In this document: positions 7,831 to 28,149 of the stretch, in pieces
Position numbering within the stretch: position 1 is the stretch's first letter
Layout: each line of letters opens with the position of its first letter
Assembly: GCA_010909165.1 (NCBI GenBank)
Contig: VJWM01000106.1
Span: 496,001 to 560,000 of the forward strand
DNA: 64,000 nucleotides
Direction: 5' to 3'
Origin: Anthoceros angustus
Taxonomy: Eukaryota; Plantae; Anthocerotophyta
Translations under genes and position numbers: made by a program
The notes under the pieces: generated by a model
Databases searched by the model: none
What the model was told of the DNA's origin: nothing
The model's input: only the letters and a program-made list of their open reading frames with translations

Positions 7831-8126
7831 TTATTGCATTGTTTACATTGCAAGTTCAAGCTACTTCATAATTCAAAACATATATTACAGGAACTTGTCA
7901 TTTGCATTAGAAAGACAGTGAACCTGTCATTTGCATTAGAAAGACAGTGAACCTGTAGGTGCGAGTCCTCAGAACCATCATCCCTAAGAATATAATATTA
8001 GTAGAATATAATATTAGCAAGGAGCAAATATGGAGACATCTAGCATATACTACTTGAGATGACAAGTTACATCACCAAAGTGTATTTAAAATAATATGCT
8101 TAAGAGTAATAAAAATATTAAAAGAG

Positions 8127-8127
<1 letters not shown>

Positions 8128-8171
<44 letters not shown>
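8128..8171. repeat. (TAA)n microsatellite within an AT-rich low-complexity tract
   Basis: About 14 perfect TAA units. Confidence 0.95.
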
Positions 8172-8271
8172 TGAAAGAGATAATAAGAATATTATAAATA
8201 TCATAAAATATTAAAAGAGATAATAAAAATTTTTAAAAGATGTTATAAATATTCAATTGATGAACGTAGAG

Positions 8272-8345
8272 TATTAAAAAAAAAGATGCCAAATCCCACC
8301 TACCCCCAAGACCAAGGGGGAGAAGGCACCAAGCTAAAAGTAGCC
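8272..8345 (-). mobile_element. Very short 3'-terminal remnant of the same RLE-element family (copy 2)
   Basis: tattaaaaaaaaagatgccaaatcccacctaccccca matches the terminal ttattatgaaaaagagatggaaacaacccatctaccccga of the other copies. Confidence 0.45.
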
Positions 8346-10192
8346 CCAAAAATATTAGAAGAGATTATGAAAATTTAAAAAAAAGACTATGAGGATGCAT
8401 TTAGCATCCTAGCCTTCTCCATATTACAAACTTTCATCCATAAACTTTGGCCCACATAAGAAAAGGGCCTCTTTTCAACATATTTTGTAGCACTTTTTGG
8501 GGTACGTTATAAAACTTATGGAGGTTGTAAATCTTGGAGACATATGTCATGTCATGTGACTTGGTAGTTGATGTCATGTTAAGAAACTGCAAAATCAGGT
8601 TAATTAACTTAAAATTAATTATATATGTTGCACTTTTGGGGCAAGCATCTAGGGAACGAGTATCGCACGGTCTGGAACGGCGTGCGGTCAAGCACACATG
8701 AGGGCAAGGTGGTGGGTGTCGATATGCGACAAACGCCTGCGGTTTGGAGGTGGCTTCCCTCCTACCCGTACACGCAGTTTGTGAGCACCAGTGTTTCTGC
8801 TGGATCCTTGGTCGGATTTCGCCACCGGAAGCAACAAAGAAGGATAAATAATTAGAACAACGAACATGCCTAGTGTTTGTTTTCGCTTTGAGAGACTCCT
8901 CTCAAACTGCTTTGCATCCTTCCGTCACGCAACATTGGTCTATGCTTCAAACCGTCGCAGCCTTGTAGCGCCTAGCTACAATTAAATATTAAATTAAGCT
9001 TTCACTAAAGAGCGCGGCGTCGAACATCATTTCTTTCCTTCTGCGCATTTGCACAGCAGCAACATCACACCAACGAACGTTCACGTTAACGTTAACGTTG
9101 GTGAGCTGATCATCGCAGTAGAGAAATGAGAACGAAACACTTTTTTTTTCATGATAAAAGGCATTCACTCCATGCTCCTCAAATTCCAAACATCGATCGT
9201 CACACTGACCAGTTTGGAATCACGTGGTACCATGTCGCTTACCATGTCTTTCGAAACCAACTTGCAAATCATCATCTTTGTGCTTCGTGAAGACGTGGCC
9301 TTATAGGCTGTACCTTAATGGCAATCGAGTGGCGATGGGAGAGTGTTCATGTCTCACTGTCAACCGACATTGAATGTCGAGCTCCAGCGCTCTCATTGAA
9401 ATGTCATGCACTCTAACCTAGCCAAAGTAAATCTAACCTCCTTGTTGGTTAGTCTGCCCGATTAGGGCAAAGATTTATGCACCAAAAGTCTCAATCTGAT
9501 TTACTTTTTTGCAAAAAAATAAATAGGCCCATGATTATTGAAGGGTTCATGAATTGGAAATCAATCACAGGTTGTCATGGTGAGGAAAAGCCTTCCTCTA
9601 TCGATGCTAGCATGTACACCGTTCTCATCTTGCGCATTAAGCAACATTTGCAAATGGAACAAGTCAAGGCATGCATGTGAACAACTTCACTTCCTTTAGT
9701 ATAGTTTATGATCATAAACTTGCAATCGGGTTCAAAGAACTCACAAAAAGCTACTTAACTGTTACTTAGCGGACATCTTTTAGTATGCCTGTTGTCATAA
9801 TATAGCCGCCTTCTTGGCGTTTGCCACTAAGCACCTAGCTGCCTTACAATGAATGCGACATTTAAATAACTAAGAAATCACAATATTTAATGACTTCAAA
9901 GCAATTAAGACTACTTAGATTACCTACCATCTAGTTCTCATAATAGTGATCTCCGCCAGCACATCTTGCATTTGACTTTACGCCTTGATAGCTTCTTCAC
10001 CTCATGATCGTGTATGTCGTTAGTTGTATGGATCTGTAAAAAAAAGGGGCAGCTTATACGACGTGCGCAATCTCAAGACCTTGAATGTTCTCTTATAATT
10101 CAAAGAGAAACCCTTTCCACTTCGTGAGGGACTTGGCACATCTTAAACACTTTAGGTTGCGACGAGGTATGTTTGATTTAAGTATCTAGAAT

Positions 10193-11846
10193 AAAGAAAA
10201 GAGAAATCATGAAATCCATATTTGTGCAGTTCAGTTCCTTTCTCATTTGCAAATAACCAAACCTCATTCACACGATTTTGAAAGTTTTCATCGCAACCCC
10301 AACTCATGAGCACTTGCAACTTTACGACACTGCTTGTAAGACGTCTCAATCAATCTTTTGATGCAAATTAAAATTATCTTTTCAGGCATCTCCGTCATTT
10401 TGCAATGTAAATTGTAATACTCCATTTGAAACATCTCAATCAAATCATAATTGAAGGATAAGGTTTTGCAGGTGGGAATTTGGTGCACTCGTAATAATGG
10501 GATGCAATTTGTGTTGGCGGATCATCATTACAATACAAATTGTAATATGTTTACAACATAAATTACAATAAGATTTCTAAAACAATTTAATTATCTTGTA
10601 TTGCAGATTATATTTCTCTTTTTGAGACATCTCAATAATCTTACAGGGTTAAAAATAGGCTTTGAAATAGATATGTACAACTTAAACTGCCAATTTTATC
10701 TATATATTCCAGTTAAAGGGTCAATATATATGTGAATTGTTTTACTAATACATGAACTCATACAACACACAAAATGCATGCAATCACCGGAGGCCACGAA
10801 CCAATCCTTTGTGGGCTCTAACTTTGAAATGTAAATATGCTGCAAGCAAAAGACAATCTAGCTTGTGAAAGTGAGATCAACCTAAGACTGCCCAACCCAC
10901 CCATATTAAGTCTTTGATGGTCGGTTTTGCCTTGTATTTCTTCCCAATAATTCAATTGATGATGTTTTTACAATGTCTGTAAATGTAAATATGGTCCGAG
11001 AAGCTTTCCCAAAGCTCCAAAGAAAAAGAGAAATCATGAAATCCATATTTGTGCGTTCGGTTCCTTTCTCATTTTGCAAATAACCAAACCTCATTCACAC
11101 GATTTTGAAAGTTTTCATCGCAACCCCAACTCATGAGCACTTGCAACTTTACGACCTTTGCTTGTAAGACGTCTCAATCAATCTTTGATGCAAATTAAAA
11201 TTATCTTTTCGGGCATCTCCGTCATTTTGCAATGTAAATTGTAATACTCCATTTGAAACATCTCAATCAAATCATAATTGAAGGATAAGGTTTTGCAGGT
11301 GGGAATTTGGTGCACTCGTAATAATGGGATGCAATTTGTGTTGGCGGATCATCATTACAATACAAATTGTAATATGTTTACAACATAAATTACAATAAGA
11401 TTTCTAAAACAATTTAATTATCTTGTATTGCAGATTATATTTCTCTTTTTGAGACATCTCAATAATCTTACAGGGTTAAAAATAGGCTTTGAAATAGATA
11501 TGTACAACTTAAACTGCCAATTTTATCTATATATTCCAGTTAAAGGGTCAATATATATGTGAATTGTTTTACTAATACATGAACTCATACAACACACAAA
11601 ATGCATGCAATCACGGAGGCCACGAACCAATCCTTTGTGGGCTCTAACTTTGAAATGTAAATATGCTGCAAGCAAAAGACAATCTAGCTTGTGAAAGTGA
11701 GATCAACCTAAGACTGCCCAACCCACCCATATTAAGTCTTTGATGGTCGGTTTTGCCTTGTATTTCTTCCCAATAATTCAATTGATGATGTTTTTACAAT
11801 GTCTGTAAATGTAAATATGGTCCGAGAAGCTTTCCCCAAAGCTCCA
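10193..11846. repeat. Near-perfect tandem duplication of an AT-rich unit of about 826 bp
   Basis: Copy 1 is 10193-11018 and copy 2 is 11019-11846. They differ mainly by 1-bp indels. Confidence 0.92.
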
Positions 11847-12011
11847 GCAAAGGTGTTCAAACCCATACCAATCTCATTTACCGTAGAATGAATTTCAAAA
11901 CCCTATATAGTGTAACATACATGTTGTCTTAAATTTTAGTAGAAAAACGAGTTACAAGTACAAGGCGGTACCAATTTGATACCAATTTTGGTATGAATTT
12001 ATATTTTATAA

Positions 12012-12366
12012 TACCGTACCCCAAGGGGTGATTCGGCGTTAATTAATTAAAATTAGTAAAATTTGAAAATCCAGAAATTATTATATTTAAAATGTTGAAT
12101 AGGTAAAAAATTATGAATTTATAATACCGAAAACATGGAAATTAGGGTTTGTGTGGAAAATTAGGGCCTATTTAGGGGAGGTATATACATATCCATTAGT
12201 TATATATATATACCTATGTATTTTAAAAAATATTGAAATTTGATAAAATTATTTTTTATAAATATTGAAATTTTGAAAAATATAAATATTTATGTTGAAC
12301 CTTATTTTTTTCAAAAAAATAATTATTTCGACATTACCCTGTTGAACCACCCCTCGGGGTACGGTA
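12012..12366. mobile_element. MITE-like element, about 355 bp, with 23-bp terminal inverted repeats
   Basis: Left end taccgtaccccaaggggtgattc; right end reverse complement taccgtaccccgaggggtggttc (21/23). The interior is very AT-rich and non-coding. The outer TA dinucleotides could be a Tc1/mariner-type TSD. Confidence 0.75.
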
Positions 12367-13861
12367 CTTAAAAATAGTCAAAACTATACGTTCATTACAA
12401 GTTATTTCGAAAAGAGATTGACCATCACCCACAAATGAAGTCAATGTTGCCAATAATCTTATAATTCATAAAGTAATATCACCCTTCTTATCATATGAGA
12501 AATTTTGAGACGACTCAAATATACAAGTATGGAATTAAGCATTGTCACTGCACAACCATGGCTTGCTCATCCATTTGTTTGGGCTTAGCTTTCTTTGCAG
12601 GATTCATTATAATATCAAATATTTGTTCACTTACAATCTCTAAGTTTAAAAGATAAAATCAGAAAGGAAATTAAAAAGGAAGTCATTATGCAAATTCGCA
12701 GCTGTAGATGAGCTCAAGAATCAGCTACACACCATAAAGAGAATAGTAATGGCCTCAAAATAATGGCCCCAACGCACCCGAATTGAGTGTTTTGACCCAT
12801 GTTCTTGAAGATTGTGCATGATTTTTGTATGACACTAGTTCATGTTAAACTCCCCTTTGTGGAAAATTCCGACCTCTACATTATAAAAACTAATTGAAAA
12901 CGAAACGAAACGATTCCTAATAAACTTAAGATCCTAATAAACCACTAGAGAAATGGAAACTATTACTATGTGGATACTAATCTGATGGTCCAGATTTTAT
13001 CATGATTTTTTCTTGGACTATGTGCCTTAGTTTTCTCAAAAAAAATAAAAAATAGACCAATACCTTTTCTCAAAATATCATATTATTTTCTGAAAATAAT
13101 AGAGCTCATACTCCTAGAAACAGCTTTTATAACACAATAGAAATTAGAAGCATCGGATAAGTACGCAGGTAGTAATGGCTCCGTTTCTTTAGAGATTTAT
13201 GAATTTATTAAAAGATCCGTTCGTGTTTCGACATGATATATTGGGCTAAAGTTTTCAATTAGTTTTTTGCTAGAGGACAAAATTTACTATTGAGGACATC
13301 TTAGCATGAACTAATGTCATGTAAAAATTGTGCATAATGTTATGGGTCAGAAGGCTCGATTTGAGAAAGTTGGGCATTGAGCATTGTGGTTGGGTACTAG
13401 AAAGTACGAATGAGTCATCAAGGCCACGAATATATACTTGATTAATATAATATACATTAGCCGTCCGCAACATGTTTAAGGAGAGAAAAAAGAATCATTG
13501 ATCAAAGGGCTGAAGCGACAAAGAAGGTGTAATCGAGTTTAAGGCATTTTAAAGCATAATGAGGTCATGAAACTTACTTGCACCCTCCAACAAAGATATG
13601 ACACCTGGCACGGACGAAGAAAGGGAGACCTTGGCTCTCTAACTCAAGGAAAATCTCGTGCATACTCTCCTCATACTTTGGCACCTCATACTGTTCCATA
13701 GTTCGGCTCTCTAACTCAAGAAAAATCTCTTGCACACAGATCCCATACTTTTGCATGGCGGGGGGTTGTCCTTTTCTTATTTTACAGTTTACTACAGACA
13801 GCGAGTCTCCATTGCCCTTCAAAGGTCGACGATAATCCTTCACAAGACGGCAACGGCAGGT

Positions 13862-14057
13862 AATGCTTCTTCCTTTACCTCTGTAATGCTTCTTCCTTTA
13901 CCTCTGTAGTTTGCAGGCCATGTATTCTTCCTGCATATGATGTCCTAGGAGCAATAGGTAACTTTACCTCTGTAATGCTTCTTCCTTTACCTCTGTAGTT
14001 TGCAGGCCATGTATTCTTCCTGCATATGATGTCCTAGGAGCAATAGGTAACTTTAGG
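13862..14057. repeat. Local tandem duplication of about 90 bp, with a nested 22-bp repeat
   Basis: ctttacctctgtaatgcttcttcctttacctctgtagtttgcaggcc...gagcaataggtaa occurs twice. Confidence 0.85.
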
Positions 14058-15791: not shown

Positions 15792-18700
15792 ATGGTACAG
15801 GAAGTTGGTGAAGACAAGACCGTGAGACTTGAAGAATTGAGGCAAGTCATTGCTGTTGCAGTGGACAAGGCTTATGACAAGGTATAATTTCTAACGGACA
15901 TTCCTGCACCGGCAGAACATGTATCTGTTCTGCTAGTATTTTTGTCAATTTCAAGTAAACCGCTTAGAGCTAGTCTCATTGTCTGTGGACCAGGCCTTGG
16001 AAGAGGCTGTGCGACGGCGCACAGCAATGGAGGAAAGTGTTTCAAATTCTGAAGCAAGATTGAAGGAGTTACTAGGCCCCTATGATGTCAAGGTACAGAC
16101 TAGTTTTATGAGCTATTTGTTCTGGTGTGAGAACTTGCATATGTGGTGACGGCAAGTGTCAACAAGTGTTCCTATATTTCAAGACCATGCTAAAATATGT
16201 GGGAGGGGTGTTTAGGCTATTGCTCCAAGGGATCTGCCACTGCAGATCAGACTAAATAACAATATGGCACGTCTGCATGAGCTCGACAGTGCAAGGGTTG
16301 GTGGATATGGCTGGGTTGGAGGTCTTGTTGTAATGGTAGAGCTTCGCCGCAGATTGATTGTACTGAGGGAGACATTAAAGTTGCCACCATGTAACACCTC
16401 AGCTGACCTTGATGAGGTAACTATACACCTTTCCCAAAAGGGTTGAGTCATTCACACTTCGCAGAGGAATTCTGCTCTAAGAGCCCCAAATACCTCTGCA
16501 GGTTCTGATGAATACAATGGAGGCCCTTACTGCTCTTTATCCTGGCAAAGTTTCCCCAGTGTCTTCCTTCAAGCTGGCCAGTGGAGATCAGAGAGCTGGA
16601 GAACAGAAGCCCATCTTTCAAGTATGTCCGGGCTTGTGTTGTGAACTCTGCTAAGTTTGTTTGGCGCAGGAAGCTTTGCACGCAACAGGATTGATGTGTA
16701 GCTGCAGAAATTTTACAATGGTTGGATTCCAATTGATGTGCATCCTTTGCATGCAGCGGTTGAAGCGTTTCTATCAAACTCTTCGTGCTATGGAGAATAC
16801 ATGGATTGAGACGTTTGCACAAAAGGTAGCACCGTAAAACCTTGCCTTCACAGTGATTGTGCTGTGTATGCATTAATATCCATTTAAAGGAAGTTGCTGA
16901 AGACAGCAGTACGTGCCTGTTGTACAAGAAGCCTTATATTCGATTGTTTGATGCTCAGAGTAATCTTCATGGTTCCATGTACAGTGGCAGTGACGGCGAA
17001 TCCAGTGTATGATAACCTCAGCCCTAGTAATGTGATGCTTTAGTGGATGTCTGGAGATAGTGTTCTGCTTAGCTGTAGAAATGGTAATATTGGGCCTGCC
17101 CTGTGACTTCAGGATGAGGAAAAAGTTCCCAGTGGTGTGGAGAACACTGAGAAGGCTGCCAAGGTGCACCTTCAAGGTATCTAGCTAATCATCTGCTAAT
17201 ACATGATGAATGCACTTCCATTACGCAAGTCACATGAATCCACTTGTTCTGCCACAGTGGCCCGGAACTGGTCCAGAGGTTGGAATTCAATGTGCAAGTG
17301 GTTTGTTGACAATGCAGAGTTGCAGGGGAAGAGAAGCTTCTGGGACAGAAACCGGGACTCCCATCGTCAGATAAAGGAGAGCTCACCCTCAACTCCTACT
17401 CAACACTTTCACTACTTGCAAAGGAGTACACGGAGCAAGTTCAGGAACAGTAAAAACAAAATCACAAAGCTGAAGAGTCATACCCTGGATGAATCCTTTG
17501 CATTGGAACAGCTGAGTAAGTGGATTGATTCAGTTGTACGTGTTGATCATGGAGTTTATGTAGTCCTGAGTAACCATGTCCCAATTCGTTTGTGGCATTG
17601 TGAACACATAGGTCACAAGATATTTTTCATGCTTGAAGAAATAAACAAGCATGCTAAATCTGCCGTGCAAACATCTGAGGATCAGGGAAGTCCTGTTTCG
17701 GAGGTTCTCAACGATATCTTGCAACCTGGCCAGGCATCCGTGCAAATCCCAGCAGATGAAGCACCGGAGAAATCAGATCTTATTAGCCAACAGGATCAAG
17801 AATCTGATTCGTGCTATTCTACAAAAGGATCGTGTACTCCAACATCAGTTCTTCCCCCTACCCCAGATGCTCTGCAGTCTTATCATGTGCACGTTGGAGC
17901 TGTACCTTTGCTTTGGCCTCCATCAGCCTTATTATTTGAGAAACAAGCACAGCCAAAGCAGGTGCGCCTGGAGAAGGGTGATAACCCAGTGGACATTGAT
18001 GCAGTGCCCCAATGTCTGGGACAAGGTTTTTTGCCTGAGCCTTCCATGTTGATGGGTTTCAATCCCATGCCAGTCTCTCCCAGAAGCAGTAGTAAGCCTA
18101 GGAGTGAGTCTCCCCTATTTGTGAACTTTACTCCTAACATGTTCAGCCCAGTTTTTGACCTGAAACCCGTTGACCTTTTCGGTGCCCATGAGAGAAAGGA
18201 GCCAGGTCAGAATGTACAACCAGATCCTCCTTTACCAGTCTCTCACAAGCAGGATGTTTCAGACAACAGACATCCTTTGCAAGATGTTGAGCTGAAGAGT
18301 AGGGACACTCCGTCCATGTTTATTCCTCTTGTACCTCCCTCCCTCCCTCCTCCCTCCTCCTCATCCTTCAGGAATAGCTGGGTCCAGTCGTCCCCCACCT
18401 CCACCACCACCACCTCCAGGCAAAGGCTCACTAAGGGTAAAAAAGACGTCCAAGCTGCGCAGGTCGTCGAAGATGGGGGTTTTGTATAGAACTATGAAAG
18501 GTAAATTGGAGGGGCGATATACAAGCCAGAAGAACAGCTCTGGTACAAGTTCACCCCTGCCAAAACCTTCAGCTAGTGCAAATGCACAAGGGGGCATGGC
18601 TGATGCACTTGCCGAGATCACGAAAAAGTAGGTGACACAATGCTGAAAGATATGGTTTTTATTAGTCATCTTGCCATCATGTATGTACCTTTGATGTTCT

Positions 18701-20057: not shown

Positions 20058-23000
20058 TTACCACTGTTTCTTCTTACGATACCAAAGCGTTAGGAAAGCT
20101 AAAAATCTAAAGAGAACACATAGGGCGGCCAACGCTGCCATGTCGATGCCAAGACGACCGTGATTCAGCGACCGGTTGTACTTGAGTTGCGTCCACACGA
20201 AGATGTTGTTCGCATCCACAAGACGCGGACAGTCACACAGAGGACATTTGCTGACGTCGTTTAAGCAGGCCATATTCGCTCCACCGTCCAGACACTCGGG
20301 CTTGTACGTGTCGCAGAAGAAGGCAATGGATGTCAAGCTGTTGAGAGCGTACTGCAGTGGGTTTGTCCAAAACATCCACTCAAAAGCCTTCAGCAGTAGC
20401 CTGTGCGTGATAACGGCACCGCCAGTTGACACCCACATACTGATGACAATTGGCACCAAAACAGCAGCAATCTGCACAGCCGGATTTTGAGTTAGCACCG
20501 TAACTGAACTCTGTAGAATCATTACCTGGCAGAAAAGATAATGCTTACCTGTGGAATAGGAGAAACCACTGCCAAAAACATGCCACAAAATGTGATAGCG
20601 AGCGTGAATTCCAGAAGGATGAACCAGTACTGGAAGAAGTCTTTCACATCTCCGACTGCGATTTGAGACATGCCAAGGAAGATGCCACAAAATATCATCG
20701 TGGCCACCGTAAGGTAAACAATCTGCATCAACAGTACGGCTCGTCAGACAATCATACACGCTTTCAGACGAATGCACAAAGCAACAGAAGCAGCGAAGTG
20801 CCATCTCCTTCATTCTGGGTTGCAGAGAACAATACCTCCGCTAAACCCCAGGCAATATTGTAGAGCAGAGGACTGTAGTGGTTGGCCGCTGCCTCTCTTA
20901 GATATACCAATCTGTGTGACAGAAGCTGTGGTATCACGTTCTGAGCATTGGTGATGCCCATAAGCACACAAGATATGAAGATGCTGAAGGCCCTTTTATT
21001 CATCTTCGGCGTTGTATGGTACTTTGCATCAAAGTAGACGGACCCGAGTAATAAACCCATGACCGTCACAAACATCATCCGCGCCCAGCTGTAGTTCACG
21101 TTTCTCCAATACATTTTCTGCATTCTCACCACAACCTCCGCCAACATTTGTCCTTGCGATGCACGGTAACCCGTTTCCATAAGCTCAGGACCAATCTTAG
21201 CCCGTCGCAATCTCTGCAGGTTCACATGGTTGTTCAGAGCCAGGTCACTCACTCGGTACTCAAACGCGTAATCCTTCACGGCGACAAGGTTTGCCACACC
21301 ATCTCCTATCACATCGATAGCAAAGGTGGAAGCATTCTTGTTTGGAGGGCACAGAGGTGTGCCTGGGATAGCTTCAAAATACTCCTGCAACACAACGATC
21401 GAAGACCACGATGCCCGGCAATTTGTCACAAATACTTTACATGAAAGGAGAGCTCTTGAAAGGAATGCTCGCATTATGCTCAACGACATACCCGCAGATA
21501 GTTGCCATTCTTGCCAACTGCACCAAAATAAACAATTGATCCACCCTTTTTCAGAACCGTAACGTTCGTGAATGCTGAAAGCAATCTTTGACTTGGATGT
21601 TGCAAACTACTGATAATGGTCCTTCCTGTTGCTGCGATATGCTGCAGAACATCCACAATAAGGTCACAGCAGTGAACTACCAACAAACTTGCTTCAGCAC
21701 AGCTATTCTCAACACGTACCCGGAGAGAGTCGATCACATTTACCGCAGCCTGGGTATCCAGTCCCTTCGTGGGTTCGTCAAGGAACATAACACTTGGATT
21801 GGACGCCAGTTCTGACGCTATAGACATTCGCACTGCCCGGTCTTTCGCCAACACATTCTCCCCCAATGAAAGTACCAATGCGTCCTCAAAGTGCTTGATT
21901 TCCACGAGGCTTAATATCTAAAAACGCAACCAGTAGGTCGTCAGCATTCTACCAGCGAAGACAAGGGGATTGGCACTTGAAGCTTTACCGATGGGCTGAT
22001 ATGATTGGACTACCTCTTCAACAAACTCTCTTCTGCTCTGAGCTGTCGAGTGCCTGCCAAGGCTCATAGTTGCACTGAAAGCAACTGCTTCTTTTACAGT
22101 CATGTAAGGTGGGTAGGACTCGAAAGCATCAACATATCCAATGACGTTTGAGAAGGTTTTCTGATTTCTCGGGAACCCATTGACTAAAATTTGCCCTCCT
22201 ACCCTGGACAAGTCCACCTTGCGTCCTGCACAACCGGAGATACGGAAGTTGTTAAGTCCAGAGGCATGGGAGACACACAAACGACACACCCAAGCTACCA
22301 AAAAGGTGGAGAACCTGCAAGGCAGTTGAGCAGAGTTGTCTTCCCTGAACCTGTACAACCCAATATGCCGAGCATGTCACCGGGTTCTGCCCAACCAGAT
22401 ACATACTTTAAAAGGGATCGAGTCTCTTGAATTTGGGGAATGAAAATGTCGAAGCTGAGTTCATGCCAGGACAGGGTCACTGGTACAGCTGTATGGGTGA
22501 GCTTCTGCCTTGCAGCCTCTGCCCATTCCACATCTTCCGCTGCAACTTGCATGGAGCTGGTATGCTTGTGCTGAGGAGAACAAGGTGAAAACAAACCACA
22601 GTGAGACCAAAAACACTCCCCAGATTGGCGATTTCAAAATTTCCAGCGTTGACATCCACAAAACACTTGCCTGACGGCTGTCGGGTACCCGAGGTGGTTC
22701 AATATGCCTGACTTTAGCGAGTGCAAGATACGCCAGTGTATTGAAAAGGATTATCCAACCAAGGATGCAAGCCACTGCAATACCGATCCAATGGTACCCG
22801 GTGTAGAATTGACCTTTCGCCAAGTATGCATGACCAATTGTGTTCTCAGGTCGGCCGACACACTGTGGCAGATTTAAGATATTGGGTATGTCTTTACACA
22901 GCATGCTGAAGCTGCCAGAGTGGAATTCGTTTATGACCAAGGCTGTGGTGCCCCACTGGAGAGGGTCGAGATAGTACATCCAGATCCAGTAACGAGGAAC

Positions 23001-26000
23001 TAAAAATCGGGGGATCAGGAACCCTGCAAACAGGACAAACAGAGCGACAAAGACACCTGCAATTTGCACACGTTTAAACAGTTACTACGGTAGTGGAGGT
23101 CGGAAGGTTGAACAAGGCCCCTCCTCAAGACTTCCAATTAAAAAGTTAGGAAATCCATGTCTATCTTCTCCATGCACTGAAACGTCAGTCTTGCAGGAAC
23201 AACGATGAAAACGCAGCAGAATCGCTTACCCACAAATGAGTTGGCCTTTTCTCGATTAGGAGCCAGGTAACTCACAAATCTCACCATTGACGCCCCATTC
23301 AGCACGGTCAGAACAAGTATCAAGTAGTACACCCAGAAATGCCAGCCATTATCCGAAAGAGTTTGGCCCGTCATGAAATACACTATCAAGGTCCAAATGG
23401 TTGCCTGGAAGACGAAGGGAAGCAATTGGAATAAATAGAGGGACCACTGTACCCAAGTGACAACAACAATCAGAATAGGAGCTGTACCTCAGCCAACGAA
23501 AATGGCATGCTTCCAAAAATCTTTGCAAACAGGAAAGTTGAGGGACGATAGAAGTGTTGGCCCTGCTGCTTGTAGTAAATTGCCCTCTCCTCCATCAAGA
23601 CAGGGATTTGTCCCAGGTTGAACAACGTCATGTTCAGAAGTGAGACAAAATATGAACCCCGTAGAAGATTCATATTGGTTTGCTTGGGTTTATTTCGCAC
23701 GCGAAAGAAGATGAAACCTGTGAAGAAGCTCATCAAAAGTATCTGCACAACATTCACACGAGCTTAGAAATGCACAGTGGTTCTGCTAAGTAAAGCTGCG
23801 GCTATGAAAATCATGCGGGCATTACTTGGCGAACAGACCTGAAATAGGCGTAGACCAAGAGAAAACTTATTCCTCCAGGTCACTGTCATCTCCCGTTGAA
23901 ATAGTCTCCTGAATTCAGTACCAGGACTCAAAATGTAGTCCTTCGTGAATTGTCGGTTGATTGAGCCGCTATCTACCTGCTCGCCAGCTCATAATAGTGA
24001 GTAGAGAGTGACACCTCCACCATCAGTTAGGATCAGCAGCATTGCACCTGAACGATGCAGGTAAAGGACTACAGACAACACACAAAAGGATGAAACGTAG
24101 CACACACCTCCTTCACGGTTCTCTGAAGCTGCAGACGCACAGGGCCCTGAATCTGAGCGATGGTCCTGCTTACTTCAGCTGCTGACAGGTTTTCTGCCTT
24201 CAAATAGTGCAAAGTTTCTGAAGGCCCTCCAAACGCAACAACTTCGTCACCAGGCTGGACCTCTAAAGTTTGATCCATTGATGTATTCTGAAGACTGCTA
24301 GTATCAGAGAGCCCGGCAACCACTGTTGAAGGGGGCTCGGTGGCCCTGAGCTTGTCCAGACGATCAACAAGGTCTAACCCGATAGGCTGAGAACCCTGCC
24401 ATAAGGAGCCGGATGAGGTTCAGAAAACGCTTCCAGAGTTTTTGTTTATTTCTCTGCTGGCAGACTGAGCTGTGTTTTGAACTGCTGAATCCTGATATCA
24501 CAGCAAACCTGAAAAATCATACAACAAGCAGGAATTTACCTGCACCCAAACCTGCTGCTTCAGGACTGGACTGTCCACAACTTGGCAAACGTGTGCAAAG
24601 GCATCGGATGCAAGAAAGGCAGCCACGAAATCATCCAAGCTGAGTGGTGGAAAGCCATTCCGAAGATACTGTCTACCCTCCTCAGTGGTGACTTCACCCA
24701 AAAATTCACCAATTCCCAGATGAATCGGCTTGAAATATCTGCCAACACAGCAGTGCAGTCACCACTGTAAATGCAATAATCATGCAGACATCCCAGCAGA
24801 GTAGAAAGGCTGTATTCAGAAAGCAATCCTTCGCACGGAGTTTACCCAAGTTTTTCAAAATATGGCAACACATCTTCGCGAGGTCCTTGGAATACCACCC
24901 GACCTTTGTCCAGAACGATGACTCTGTCGAAAAGGTCGTACACTTCAGCCGATGGCTGAAACAGCGAAGCCATCACAGTAAAATGGCGGACACGGGTGAA
25001 GATCCGAAGACTGTTCACAAGGTCATATGTTACCGAATCATCCAGTCCAGCATTCAGCTGATCGAAGAGATAGACAGCATAGGCCCCTGCCACCACCTCC
25101 GCTGCTGTCAGGCGGTGTCTCTCATCTTCCGTCAGCTGTCCCCCCACTGGGCGGTCAGCAACCCTTTTCAAACCCAACATGCTGAGGGTAAGCTCCAGTT
25201 TCGGATCTTGTCCGGCTTCGAGAGCCTCGGATAACATTCGCAGCAATTCTGGCCCGTACATCTTAGGACTCCACTCCAGTGACACATCTCTAGCGAACTC
25301 CAACGTTTCCCGTACTGACAAGGTAGCAAGATGAACGTCCCTACTTTCTATAACACCAGCGAGCCGTTGGTACAGGAGACCACTGACTTCCTTATTGTTG
25401 TAGGTGACACTGCCCTCAACATGGGCACCCGGCAGAGGATGACGACCAGCAGCCAACTTCAGCAGAATACTCATACCACAACCAGGAGGGCCTGCAGCAG
25501 AGAGCGTACGGAGCAGTTTATGCCTTCATGGACGAATATGAGAACACAAAACGTACTACGAAGTCGGAGATGGACCATGACGACACATGAGTTCGCTCCA
25601 CCATTACCTACAATCAGAGTGAGCGTGCCCGGCATCAAGTAGCCTGTAACATCTTTGAGAAAGTGAACCGTCTCAGGGACAGGTTTTTTCTTCAAGGGCC
25701 CAGCAAGACACCCCATCACCTGCGAGCAAGCATAAGAATCAACTCCGTGAGATGTCACAACGTTGCGAGGATTCACTGCGGTGACACGTACCAGCCCTTC
25801 TGCTCACCTTGGTGTACATGGTCTCGTACGGAACATCCGGTCTCACCACTTCCCGACTGTAAGAGAGACCTTTGAACTTCACAATCTGAGAGCCACAACG
25901 TTTCCCTTCAGACGGTGACCCCATTTGCGAAATGAAGCCATGGCCCACGTGGCCACCATGGCAGCAGAGACGGTTACAACACCAACCTGGGTGGGAATAA

Positions 26001-26958
26001 CTGGCAAATGTGGGCTGACACGCTGCATATACTGCAACAGCCCATCTTTGAGCAGCAGATCCATGCCCCTCAGCTCGGTCTGAGATATCTGGTCTGGAAT
26101 GCGGAGTTCCGACAAGGTCCTCGCAATCTTGTCAGCTTCGGAGAGGAAACCTTTCTTCCAAAGTGCCTGGTGGTAGAGGATGACAAGATGTATCAAAGCA
26201 GCGTGCGGAGCAGCTGCCAGAATATCATAGAAGTCCTTGGGAAGGTCCAAAGAGTAGTCCATCTTCACAGTCTCCTCCACAGTCTCCTCCTGCCTCCTCT
26301 CCCCGGCACCTCGGCTCCCACTTCTCAGCAGCTCCTCAACATTCCTCCCCTTGAAGCTCTGCGCCTTCTTGATGTAGGCAAGATTAAAATTACGATTCTT
26401 CCATTCCCCGAGCCCCTCCTGCAGCAAGACAGACGGGTCAAAAGAAGTGGCGGCTGCCATAACAGAGCCGTCATTGGTGGAGGCTCCGCGCACGTAGTCC
26501 GCCCCCTGGTTGGAGGTCCCCGATCTGGCTCGGCTGAGAACGGGATTCCAAGCATCATCCCCCAGGGGCTGACTGTGGCGTGATCCGGCCCGAGACAGCA
26601 GCGGATTCCACCTTGCAGAGTCCTCTGCATGCGATCGCCTGCCCGAATTGGAGCCCCTGGAGCGGGCCCCGCTCCGACTGAGAAGCGGATTCCATGAAAG
26701 CTCATCCGCAGGAAGGGGCGCATTTGCAGCAAGCAGCTGAGTCCTACTGGCCATGGCCGGGTCGTCCGCAAACGGATTAGCAAACGGATTCGAGCTGGTA
26801 GACCTGGCGCGTCCCATCACAGGATCTACACCGGCGCGTGGAGGCAGCCCGGCTTCCCCCCTGCTCCCTCCTCTCTCCAGCCTGGGAACCTCGCCATCTT
26901 TTCTCCCCACGCTACGGCGGGGAGCTCCCGGCGGAGCCTCCTCCCACCTGTCCGCCAT
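20058..26958 (-). CDS. ABCG: Full-size ABCG (PDR-type) transporter, NBD1-TMD1-NBD2-TMD2, with a PDZ-like insertion and degenerate ATPase motifs; many exons
   Basis: NBD1: FLKDVTGYLMPGTLTLIV|GPPGCG, SLFQPSAEVYDLFDRVIVL, QGPREDVLPYFEKLG. TMD1: EERAIYYKQQGQHFY, WIWMYYLDPLQW, INEF. NBD2: GCTGSGKTTLLNCLAG, ELASNPSVMFLDEPTKGLD. TMD2: YWRNVNYSWARM, VYLREAAANHYSPLLY, NPLQYALNSL. Probable start is MADRWEE at 26958. Confidence 0.93.
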
Positions 26959-28149
26959 TTCCCTCTTTCCAGAATCCGCTGCCCGTCTCAAGTCACAAAG
27001 CACTGCGTGCAAGCAACGGATAAAATCTCAGCGCCGATCAAACCACGGGCCTCCGAGGCTGATGCAAACATTGCCTTGTGCAGACTGCGCACACCACGTT
27101 GCACAGATTTGCTGGGCACCACACGAAAATGAACTCAGCTTTTGCAGCTCCAGGAAGGAGAAGGAATGAATCCAAACCTCCATCCGAACAGGGAAATTCC
27201 GAGCAAGAAGTGGATCAATCAAGTCGAGCTGCAAGGCAGCAGGGTTGGCACACCAGAGACCAAATGGAAGCTTCGGTGAGCCCATTCATTGATTCGCGTC
27301 TCCAACTGTTGAGACGCGGGAGTCCGAACTTGGTACGTACAAACACTGCCATCTCCGCTTGGATGTGGAGGAAAGGAAGACTGCTGTATACATTGGTATG
27401 TTTTAGCTTCCAGTCTCTCTCTTCTATCTTTCTTCAAACGGCGGCGGTGTGCCCATATACTAAGAGCAGCACGCAGGCGCGTGCGGACCCCCAGTCAAAG
27501 GCGATAAGACCTCCCTCAGGGAAGGGGGCTGCCTTCCCGACAGCCAACCAGTGCGCCCATTATCGTAACACCATTGCGACCTGACAGGCGTGCGAAGCTT
27601 CGTCAGCAGCTTCCGAGAACTTTCACTTCCCATTTCCTCGTGTTTCTTTATCAGATTTGTATAGCTGGTGATGTGCGACAGCGGAACGCTACAAGCAAGA
27701 AAGGACAAAACTCCGGAGTCGTGGGACACAACCACAACCACAACCACCACAAAGATATTCTCCGGTCGTTGGGCAGAAGAACGGAAGAAATTTTTAGTGT
27801 CCACGAAATTTTCAGGTCGGGGGGAATTCCCGTGATTCCATTTACATATATATAGTCTATATTATATATATGGGAGTAGATGTAAACAAGTCCACTTATT
27901 TCGGAAGTTTATGTTGATCTTAAGGGCACTATGAAAGATTGCATGTGGAGACAACAAGAAAAGTGGATGACAATTTTTGGAATTCGTAAGTCAACTCGAA
28001 ATGTTTCCAATTATGAAACGAGCAGTTGTCATAGCCAAACTTCCCTAACATGCCACGAACATAAGAAAACCAGCACATATCTTGAATACAGCTTGAATGA
28101 CATTAATTTTTATCATATATAATTATCTACAATAAAAACTGTAGCCTGC

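What the first reader, a model, noticed from the sequence alone, without database searches (positions are those of the whole stretch)
24108..24395. PDZ-like domain inserted into a PDR/ABCG transporter on its own phase-0 exon
Seen: between NBD1 and TMD1 there is a 288-nt exon (96 codons, phase 0 at both ends) reading (VWVQ)|GSQPIGLDLVDRL...TVVAGLSDTSS...VQPGDEVVAFGG...ENLSAAEVSRTIAQIQGPVRLQLQR. This follows the PDZ pattern: carboxylate loop PIGL, betaC VVAGL, GD-x-V-V-A, alphaB and terminal VRLQLQR. The flanking exons are canonical PDR linker (GEFLGEVTT; DYILSPGTEFRRLFQRE). Established: plant PDRs have no such domain, and animal ABC transporters usually bind separate PDZ scaffold proteins. Inference: an exon-shuffled transporter-PDZ fusion, an architecture I do not recognise as described.
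Basis: partly seen in the sequence, partly recalled or inferred. Interest (0 to 1): 0.78.

Follow-up and report, generated by a model that had tools for sequence, protein, structure and literature searches.

The report
Built-in PDZ domain in plant ABCG pump
A plant membrane-pump gene of the ABCG/PDR type carries, between its first ATP-binding part and its first membrane part, a conserved extra exon whose predicted shape is a PDZ protein-docking domain. The feature is shared by an old, little-studied branch of these pumps from pond algae to flowering plants, and I found no paper describing it.

Summary
Window 24108-24395 (minus strand) is a 96-codon, phase-0/phase-0 exon with AG and GT splice sites, inside a full-size ABCG/PDR gene at about 20058-27012.

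The PDZ reading is supported by fold, not by sequence:
- Pfam finds nothing in the exon.
- AlphaFold2 with a 55-row alignment gives pLDDT 74.5 and the PDZ strand and helix order.
- The top 50 hits of both Foldseek and an unbiased search of 48,161 PDB chains are all PDZ domains (Z up to 8.2).
- The Mesotaenium ortholog's insert reaches Pfam PDZ_6 just under threshold (E 1.6e-5).
- The X-Phi-G-Phi loop, the GD turn and the last strand RLQL[EQ]R are conserved.

First, the insert is not private to this genome. It sits at the same place in Zygnematophyceae, bryophyte-like contigs, a fern and many angiosperms, in proteins named only "ABCG-like". Second, the exon does not hold the whole domain. Strand A appears to be the end of the upstream exon, and one lineage lacks that intron.

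The host clade also has degenerate ATPase motifs. The scan noted the same kind of insert before, in another ABCG on another piece of this genome (s1-285842). I found no published description. Function is untested; a tethered protein-docking or regulatory module is my best inference.

The parts
24108..24395 (-). PDZ-fold exon: 96 codons, phase 0/0, predicted strands B-F and helices A-B
   Evidence: sequence, splice sites; AF2; fold searches; homologs; dN/dS
24375..24386 (-). P-I-G-L, the X-Phi-G-Phi ('GLGF') carboxylate-binding loop position. Gly is 92% and the following Leu 90% conserved over 55 sequences. Mosses read GLGF after it and angiosperms read GLGL at it.
24225..24251 (-). GDEVVAFGG, the 'GD-x-V-x-A-x-x-G' turn plus strand D. 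G49, D50 and V52 are 93-98% conserved.
24120..24137 (-). RLQLQR, the last strand (F). It is almost invariant from Zygnematophyceae to angiosperms, including the alternate residues that would face outward (R87, Q89, E/Q91).
   Evidence: aligned with strand F of the PDLIM2 PDZ
24540..24737 (-). Upstream linker exon (66 codons). Its end ...QQVWVQ is the inferred strand A of the PDZ.
   Evidence: conserved [WFY]-V-[EQ] directly before the loop in P0034, P0038, P0005, P0046 and the tracheophyte proteins
24396..24539 (-). Intron (144 nt, GT..AG, contains an in-frame stop). It lies inside the domain, between strand A and the GLGF loop, and is absent in the L009/P0034 lineage.
23977..24107 (-). Intron (131 nt, GT..AG) after the PDZ exon
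23839..23976 (-). Downstream linker exon (46 codons) leading into TMD1
24845..25492 (-). NBD1 exon. Walker A is GPPGCGMS (Lys replaced by Met), the signature is degenerate (LTEDER), and Walker B is FDQ.
20058..27012 (-). Host gene: full-size (NBD-TMD)x2 ABCG/PDR-type gene, about 14 exons. Limits are approximate and the start codon is not fixed.

Best explanation
The exon encodes most of a divergent but genuine PDZ-fold domain, with canonical strand order. Strand A comes from the end of the exon before it. The domain is built into the cytosolic linker between NBD1 and TMD1 of a full-size ABCG transporter. It is a fixed, selected character of an old streptophyte ABCG clade, found from Zygnematophyceae to angiosperms. 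That clade also has a conserved N-terminal module and degenerate ABC signature motifs. Shown here: the exon is real, it is under constraint, it is widely distributed, and it has a predicted PDZ fold that keeps the X-Phi-G-Phi loop. Inferred: the domain sits at the membrane face of the transporter as a tethered protein-docking module. It would bind a short peptide, a C-terminal tail or an internal strand of a partner or of the transporter's own long N-terminal region, by strand addition in the groove between strand B and helix B. It would be anchored to the transporter through the invariant outer face of strand F. Through this it would regulate, localise or couple a pump whose own ATPase sites look impaired. 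Animal ABC transporters obtain the same service in trans from NHERF/PDZK1-type scaffolds.
For: Real coding exon: (dN/dS 0.16-0.40; exon 99% against introns 93-95% in a close pair; 69% against about 55% in a distant pair). Fold: AF2 with the 55-row alignment gives pLDDT 74.5, pTM 0.65 and the order E-E-(h)-E-E-H-E. Foldseek's top 50 are all PDZ, with probability up to 0.99 and TM 0.55-0.60. The VIA search of 48,161 chains also returns only PDZ in its top 50, with Z 8.2-6.8 and rmsd 2.1-3.0 A over 71-81 of 96 residues. Sequence level: Mesotaenium ortholog P0005 hits PDZ_6 at E 1.6e-5 (25.0 bits against cut-off 27) and PDZ at E 0.018, on the GD..ING stretch. Profile A2 hits the PDLIM2 PDZ at E 0.027-0.23, in register on helix B and strand F. 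Language-model neighbours carry PDZ families. Motifs: the loop Gly, the GD turn and strand F are conserved. Distribution. Cytosolic position: it lies between the NBD1 and ABC2_membrane hits. Impaired ATPase motifs.
Against: No Pfam PDZ model matches the window exon, nor any of the 31 bryophyte-like sequences, even at E 10. None matches six tracheophyte orthologs at E 1. The only sequence-level hit is sub-threshold and comes from one alga. Individual Foldseek E-values are weak (0.06-0.4), and a best Z of about 8 is, by the tool's own note, common for models with no true match. The case rests on the uniformity of the hit lists. pLDDT is moderate, and 59-70 in the first 40 residues. I could not fold strand A together with the exon. 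The groove residues (strand B, helix B) vary between lineages more than strand F does. The basic residue before the loop is missing in the window. The C-termini of the family are not a conserved PDZ ligand. No ligand, no transcript read and no structure were available for this gene.
Confidence: 0.68

Rival explanations
1. The domain has a PDZ fold but is not a ligand-binding module. It has been kept as an intramolecular brace or spacer that packs against NBD1, the N-terminal module or the elbow helix. It would shape the geometry of an atypical, possibly non-hydrolysing ABCG.
For: The best-conserved residues are the alternate, presumably exposed, residues of strand F (R87, Q89, E/Q91, R92), T43 and Y64, rather than helix B or strand B. 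The basic residue before the loop is not conserved. There is no conserved C-terminal ligand in cis.
Against: The X-Phi-G-Phi loop Gly and the following hydrophobic residue are 90-92% conserved. That is expected if the carboxylate or strand-binding groove is still used. PDZ domains often use both a groove and a back face.
Confidence: 0.25
2. The segment is not a PDZ. It would be a clade-specific beta-rich linker insert of another or no defined fold, which AF2 pushes into a common small sandwich.
For: There are no Pfam hits in land-plant members. pLDDT is moderate. Z of about 8 is within the tool's background range. The single-sequence model was poor.
Against: Two independent structure searches return only PDZ domains, over the whole length. 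The motif order (X-Phi-G-Phi, GD-x-V-x-A, helix, RLQL-R) is in PDZ register. There is a sub-threshold PDZ_6/PDZ hit in the algal ortholog. The profile hits to PDLIM2 are in register.
Confidence: 0.08
3. The exon is a cassette. Because it is symmetric (phase 0/0, 288 nt), skipping it keeps the frame, so plus-PDZ and minus-PDZ isoforms could be made as a regulatory switch. This does not exclude the best explanation.
For: Exon length and phases. Several grass gene models lack part of the domain (P0055, P0059, P0061).
Against: Without the exon, strand A and the linker would be left without the rest of the domain. The strong constraint argues that inclusion is the main form. The truncated grass models may be annotation errors. 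No transcript data were available.
Confidence: 0.12
4. The fusion arose recently by exon shuffling in this genome.
For: Symmetric phase-0 exon.
Against: The same insert sits at the same site in Mesotaenium, bryophyte-like loci, a fern and angiosperms. The intron cuts the domain and is missing in one lineage.
Confidence: 0.02

Closest known systems
Canonical PDZ domains (Pfam PF00595 / PF17820; e.g. MPDZ PDZ11 2qg1, PDLIM2 2pa1, Dishevelled 1l6o)
   Same: Predicted fold and element order; the X-Phi-G-Phi loop before strand B; the GD turn before strand D; a long helix B followed by a final strand ending in Arg. Z 8.2 and rmsd 2.5 A over 76 residues to 2qg1; Foldseek probability 0.99.
   Different: Sequence identity is only 8-23%. 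No Pfam model reaches threshold. The B-C loop is long and low-confidence. There is no conserved basic residue before the loop. The domain sits inside a polytopic transporter rather than in a soluble scaffold. The outer face of strand F is unusually conserved.
Plant and fungal full-size ABCG / PDR transporters (e.g. Arabidopsis ABCG29-43, yeast Pdr5; established knowledge)
   Same: (NBD-TMD)x2 reverse topology; ABC2_membrane and PDR_assoc signatures; PDR-type linker motifs on both sides of the insert.
   Different: An extra domain of about 100 residues in the NBD1-TMD1 linker. A clade-specific N-terminal module. Both ABC signatures degenerate and NBD1 Walker B reads D-Q. In the window protein, the NBD1 Walker A Lys is replaced by Met.
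Animal ABC transporters served by separate PDZ scaffolds (CFTR, ABCC2 and ABCC4 with NHERF1/PDZK1; ABCG2 with PDZK1; e.g. PMC5803867 for the ABCG2-PDZK1 link)
   Same: An ABC transporter paired with a PDZ domain at the cytosolic membrane face.
   Different: In animals the PDZ is on another protein and binds the transporter's tail. Here the PDZ is part of the transporter, and its ligand is unknown.
Membrane proteins with built-in PDZ domains (site-2 proteases of the RseP/EGY type, HtrA/Deg and Ctp proteases; established knowledge)
   Same: A PDZ in cis acts as gate or sensor for a membrane-associated machine. The CtpB and Vibrio Ctp PDZ domains appear in the hit list at Z 7.2.
   Different: Those are proteases, many with a circularly permuted PDZ. 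The domain here appears to have the canonical order and sits in a transporter.
Earlier scan finding s1-285842 (another ABCG on another piece of the same genome)
   Same: Same kind of insert at the same position, and the same reading by a follow-up agent.
   Different: A different locus, presumably a paralog. I could not read its sequence, so the relation to the two subtypes seen here (window/algal type and tracheophyte type) is open.

Membership tests
PDZ domain | Small beta-sandwich of 5-6 strands with two helices, in the order A-B-C-alphaA-D-E-alphaB-F | tested here: met
   The AF2 model has E7-13, E23-29, H34-36, E51-56, E62-64, H72-81 and E87-91. The top 50 hits of Foldseek and of VIA are all PDZ. 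Strand A is not in the exon; it is inferred from the upstream exon end.
PDZ domain | Carboxylate-binding loop X-Phi-G-Phi immediately before strand B | tested here: met
   P4-I5-G6-L7 in the window. Gly is 92% and Leu 90% conserved over 55 sequences. Angiosperms read GLGL, and mosses read PLGL followed by GF.
PDZ domain | Significant match to a curated PDZ sequence model | tested here: not met
   Window exon: 0 Pfam families at E 10. 31 relatives: none. Six tracheophyte orthologs: none. The algal ortholog P0005 scores 25.0 bits against the 27 cut-off for PDZ_6, E 1.6e-5.
PDZ domain | Binds a C-terminal or internal peptide in the strand B / helix B groove | not testable with these tools
   No coordinates or binding data were available. 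The groove residues vary between lineages.
PDZ domain | Canonical rather than circularly permuted topology | tested here: inconclusive
   The alignments are collinear with metazoan PDZs over model residues 1-96, and a conserved strand-A-like [WFY]-V-[EQ] lies upstream. I did not fold strand A with the exon, because joining exons was left out.
Full-size ABCG / PDR transporter (host gene) | Two NBD-TMD halves in reverse order, with ABC-2 type membrane domains | tested here: met
   ABC2_membrane hits in four exons and PDR_assoc at E 1.1e-7. The gene is collinear with the 1534-aa P0046.
Full-size ABCG / PDR transporter (host gene) | At least one catalytically complete composite ATP site (Walker A Lys, Walker B Glu, His loop, and an LSGGQ-type signature from the other NBD) | tested here: not met
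   NBD1: GPPGCGMS and FDQ. NBD2: GCTGSGKTT, LDEP and QHPS are intact, but the NBD1 signature that completes that site reads LTEDER. The NBD2 signature reads AKDRA. This was judged by motif only; activity is untested.
Exon-shuffled domain | Domain limits coincide with symmetric-phase introns | tested here: not met
   The phases are 0/0, but the 5' intron falls between strand A and the loop and is absent in L009.

The most novel reading that the evidence does not exclude
This is a streptophyte-wide, very old clade of PDR-like proteins that have given up normal ATP-driven pumping. Both signatures are degenerate, and Walker motifs have been lost in different NBDs in different lineages. On this reading the proteins act as membrane-anchored scaffolds, sensors or regulated channels. 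Their built-in PDZ would recruit a partner protein, a signalling-type use of an ABC transporter not described in plants.
Probability: 0.25. Interest if true: 0.85.

Novelty: new variant of a known kind. Interest (0 to 1): 0.66.

Why it matters
PDZ domains are the classic organisers of animal membrane transporters, but they act there from separate scaffold proteins. Plants have few PDZ proteins, and I know of none in a transporter. A PDZ fold fixed inside an ABCG has been kept since before plants moved onto land. It sits in a clade whose ATPase motifs look impaired and which has no characterised member that I could find. This points to an unstudied mode of transporter regulation or to a non-transport role. 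It gives concrete handles: delete or mutate the domain, fish for its ligand, and knock out the gene in Marchantia, Physcomitrium, Anthoceros or a grass. It also shows that family scans (Pfam) miss the domain in all land-plant members, so current ABC inventories do not list it.

Tried and rejected
- Pfam on the exon alone, on 6 and on 31 relatives, and on six full-length orthologs gave no PDZ.
- Single-sequence AF2 was too poor to use (pLDDT 48).
- phmmer of the exon against 1.84 billion representatives gave only 5 true clusters. P0002 and P0007 are repeat-protein false hits.
- The 6-sequence profile against PDB sequences gave HisF-type noise at the top and a PDZ only at E 0.37.
- I tested the idea that the PDZ binds the transporter's own C-terminus. 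The tails are short, share an 'LKHN' membrane-proximal motif in most members, but end variably (AHAH, PPQT, RPRL, KHNK, KKQW in the window). This gives no support.
- Exact look-up of the window ORF over the exon in public contigs found nothing on record, so I obtained no transcript or species evidence.
- ESM Atlas holds no model for either query, so no structure-based neighbours were available.
- Five paper searches for PDZ with plant ABCG/PDR found only animal ABCG2-PDZK1 work.
The window's own strand A plus exon, and the full-length protein, were therefore never folded or searched as one sequence.
Full report
**What is in the sequence**

On the minus strand, an AG acceptor (24397-24396) opens an exon at 24395 and a GT donor (24107-24106) closes it at 24108. 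The exon is 288 nt, 96 codons without a stop, and phase 0 at both ends.

The exon before it (24540-24737) ends ...SPVLKQQVWVQ, followed by gtaaat. The two introns are 144 and 131 nt.

The host is a full-size ABCG/PDR-type gene:
- Pfam ABC2_membrane hits four of the larger exon ORFs.
- PDR_assoc hits at E 1.1e-7.
- A 1534-aa Mesotaenium ABCG (P0046) aligns collinearly to the window from 26247 down to 20064 in 12 blocks.

**The exon is real and constrained**

A phmmer search of the 96 residues against 1.84 billion representative proteins found five true clusters. Four are exon-sized ORFs called on metagenome or SRA contigs. One is a Mesotaenium endlicherianum ABCG (P0005, ME000174S02104).

I fetched the contigs, L001-L009. 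Each shows the same layout: an ABC_tran ORF upstream and ABC2_membrane ORFs downstream.

In five different sequences the exon begins directly after a pyrimidine tract plus AG, with Gly as its first residue. It ends in phase 0 at a GT donor, or GC in L002.

| Comparison | Measure | Value |
|---|---|---|
| window vs L002 | dN/dS | 0.33 |
| L003 vs L001 | dN/dS | 0.25 |
| L003 vs L005 | dN/dS | 0.16 |
| close pair | exon vs flanking intron identity | 99% vs 93-95% |
| distant pair | exon vs flanking intron identity | 69% vs about 55% |

**The insert is an old clade character, not a private fusion**

- A profile search with six exon peptides found 29 more fragments.
- A search with the linker region of P0005 found its neighbour paralog P0046 and a grass protein.
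- A search with that grass protein's linker found 34 annotated land-plant ABCGs. They include Aristida, Urochloa, Panicum, Setaria, Oryza brachyantha, Asimina, Tasmannia, Hevea, Eucalyptus, Actinidia, Cornus, Castanea, Trema, Parasponia, Corchorus and the fern Adiantum.

Their names are generic ("ABC transporter G family member 31/36/37/39-like", "PDR TUR2-like", "hypothetical"). None carries a precomputed Pfam PDZ.

In a joint alignment (A3) all of these have the insert at the same place, with the same landmarks:
- [WFY]-V-[EQ], then x-x-x-Phi-G-Phi;
- a variable loop;
- a V-V-A-type strand;
- G-D-x-V;
- a Tyr;
- a helix;
- R-L-Q-[LV]-E-R.

The nearly invariant positions are G6, L7, G33, T43, G49, D50, V52, Y64 and R87-L88-Q89-x-E91-R92.

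**Is it a PDZ?**

Sequence models say no for land plants:
- zero Pfam families at E 10 for the window exon;
- none for 31 relatives;
- none for six full-length orthologs.

Other evidence points to PDZ at a weak sequence level:
- The algal ortholog P0005 matches PDZ_6 at E 1.6e-5 (25.0 bits, cut-off 27) and PDZ (PF00595) at E 0.018. Both fall exactly on the G-D-R-V-L-A-I-N-G stretch.
- A profile of 31 sequences puts three PDLIM2 PDZ chains among its four best PDB sequences (E 0.027, 0.042, 0.23). They align in register on helix B and the last strand.
- Language-model neighbours with a family name are all PDZ-type. I treat this as a lead only.

The structure prediction is the main test. Single-sequence AF2 failed (pLDDT 48). 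With the 55-row alignment the result was pLDDT 74.5 and pTM 0.65. The predicted elements are E7-13, E23-29, a short helix at 34-36, E51-56, E62-64, H72-81 and E87-91. This is the PDZ order from strand B to strand F.

| Search | Library | Top 50 hits | Scores |
|---|---|---|---|
| Foldseek | PDB | all PDZ domains | probability up to 0.99, TM 0.55-0.60, individual E 0.06-0.4 |
| VIA | 48,161 representative chains, independent of Foldseek | all PDZ domains | Z 8.2-6.8, rmsd 2.1-3.0 A over 71-81 of 96 residues |

The VIA tool warns that a best Z near 8 alone is not decisive. The weight lies in three things: the hit lists are uniform, the matches cover the full length, and they agree with the sequence landmarks. 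I put the PDZ fold at about 0.9.

**Anatomy**

- The loop P4-I5-G6-L7 (24375-24386) occupies the X-Phi-G-Phi position. Its Gly is the conserved one. The second Gly of the moss 'PLGLGF' is not conserved.
- GDEVVAFGG (24225-24251) is the GD turn plus strand D.
- RLQLQR (24120-24137) is strand F.
- The model begins with strand B, so strand A must come from ...VWVQ at the end of the upstream exon. The intron 24396-24539 therefore lies inside the domain.
- In one lineage that intron is missing. The ORF P0034 on the genomic contig L009 reads straight through ...LLEELWVE-GNQPLGLGF... and then runs into the next intron.
- Several grass gene models lose the second half of the domain after G-D-V. This suggests a different exon structure there, or annotation errors.

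"On its own exon" is thus only approximately true, and exon shuffling is not shown.

**Host clade**

I aligned window exons singly to full-length relatives, with no joining. The family is atypical:
- Both ABC signatures are degenerate in all members. NBD1 reads S/T-x-x-[DE]-R. NBD2 reads G-K-T-[FY]-E-I-A-K in tracheophytes and AKDRA in the window.
- NBD1 Walker B is D-Q in land plants.
- The NBD2 Walker A is degenerate in angiosperms but canonical in the window (GCTGSGKTT).
- The window's NBD1 Walker A reads GPPGCGMS, with Met in place of Lys.

This agrees with the scan's separate note s1-300284.

A family-specific N-terminal module (...LLKDG[LF]..Y[LM]...P.IP.Q) is conserved from the alga to angiosperms.

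**How it most likely works**

Shown: the domain is part of a constrained coding sequence. It lies on the cytosolic side, directly before the first membrane domain. It is predicted to be a PDZ that keeps the loop used for strand or carboxylate binding.

Inferred: it is a tethered docking or regulatory module. It would bind a peptide of a partner, or of the transporter's own long N-terminal region, and be held on the transporter by the invariant outer face of strand F.

The main rival is a purely structural brace. That reading is favoured by the fact that strand F and a few turn residues are better conserved than the groove. I tested one concrete cis hypothesis, binding of the protein's own C-terminus, and found no conserved ligand. 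Alternative splicing of this symmetric exon cannot be excluded.

**Comparison and novelty**

The closest known things are:
- canonical PDZ domains (fold);
- PDR transporters (host);
- animal ABC transporters that use PDZ scaffolds in trans;
- membrane proteases with cis PDZ domains.

Five full-text searches found no paper that links a PDZ to a plant ABCG. A recent inventory of 159,077 plant ABC genes does not mention PDZ.

The scan itself found the same kind of insert earlier, in another ABCG on another piece of this genome. The follow-up agent there reached the same reading (s1-285842). Earlier notes call the genome a probable hornwort. I did not test that.

**Limits**

No transcript data, coordinates or binding data were available. 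Whether Arabidopsis or rice lack the clade was not tested. The word-indexed searches cannot show absence.

Noticed in passing
window 24845-25492 and 21507-22483 (minus strand): The ATPase motifs of the host ABCG are atypical. NBD1 Walker A is GPPGCGMS (Lys to Met), NBD1 Walker B is FDQ, the NBD1 signature is LTEDER and the NBD2 signature is AKDRA. NBD2 Walker A, Walker B and the His loop are canonical. Across the clade both signatures are always degenerate, and which Walker A is lost differs between lineages: NBD2 in angiosperms, NBD1 here.
   Followed up: partly
window about 26530-26694 (minus strand): There are three copies of W-N-P-[LV]-L-S-R-[SA] spaced 20-28 residues apart in the Ser/Arg-rich N-terminal extension of the ABCG. 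They are not found in the 11 orthologs checked. They might be phospho-regulated or docking motifs.
   Followed up: partly
window about 25984-26247 (minus strand): A clade-specific N-terminal helical module (...LIHLVILYHQAL...GMDLLLKDGLLQYMQRV..P.IPTQV) is conserved from Mesotaenium to angiosperms. It has no Pfam family.
   Followed up: partly
L009:5001-5420 (P0034; also P0038, P0042): In this lineage the intron between the linker exon and the PDZ exon is absent. One ORF covers strand A and the rest of the domain. It is a natural contiguous template for folding the full domain.
   Followed up: partly
P0005 (Mesotaenium ME000174S02104), residues about 403-540 and 545-680: The gene model repeats the PDZ-plus-linker segment exactly. 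This is either a tandem exon duplication or an assembly or annotation artefact. The adjacent gene ME000174S02102 (P0046) is a paralog with one copy.
   Followed up: no
P0055, P0059, P0061 (Eragrostis, Oryza brachyantha): These annotated proteins lack the second half of the PDZ, after G-D-V. This suggests either a skipped exon in the gene models or real isoforms.
   Followed up: no
family C-termini; window 20058-20090: Most clade members end with a conserved L-K-H-N motif right after the last membrane helix, followed by 1-6 variable residues. The window protein instead ends ...WYRKKKQW.
   Followed up: partly
window 17203-18489 (plus strand): A 428-aa open frame, Pro/Ser-rich with a poly-Pro run, lies just downstream of the ABCG on the other strand. 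I did not examine it.
   Followed up: no
window 8001-14000: An AT-rich stretch (GC 0.34-0.38) lies in a window that otherwise runs at 0.45-0.60. This is the same kind of AT-rich island that another scan note describes for this genome.
   Followed up: no
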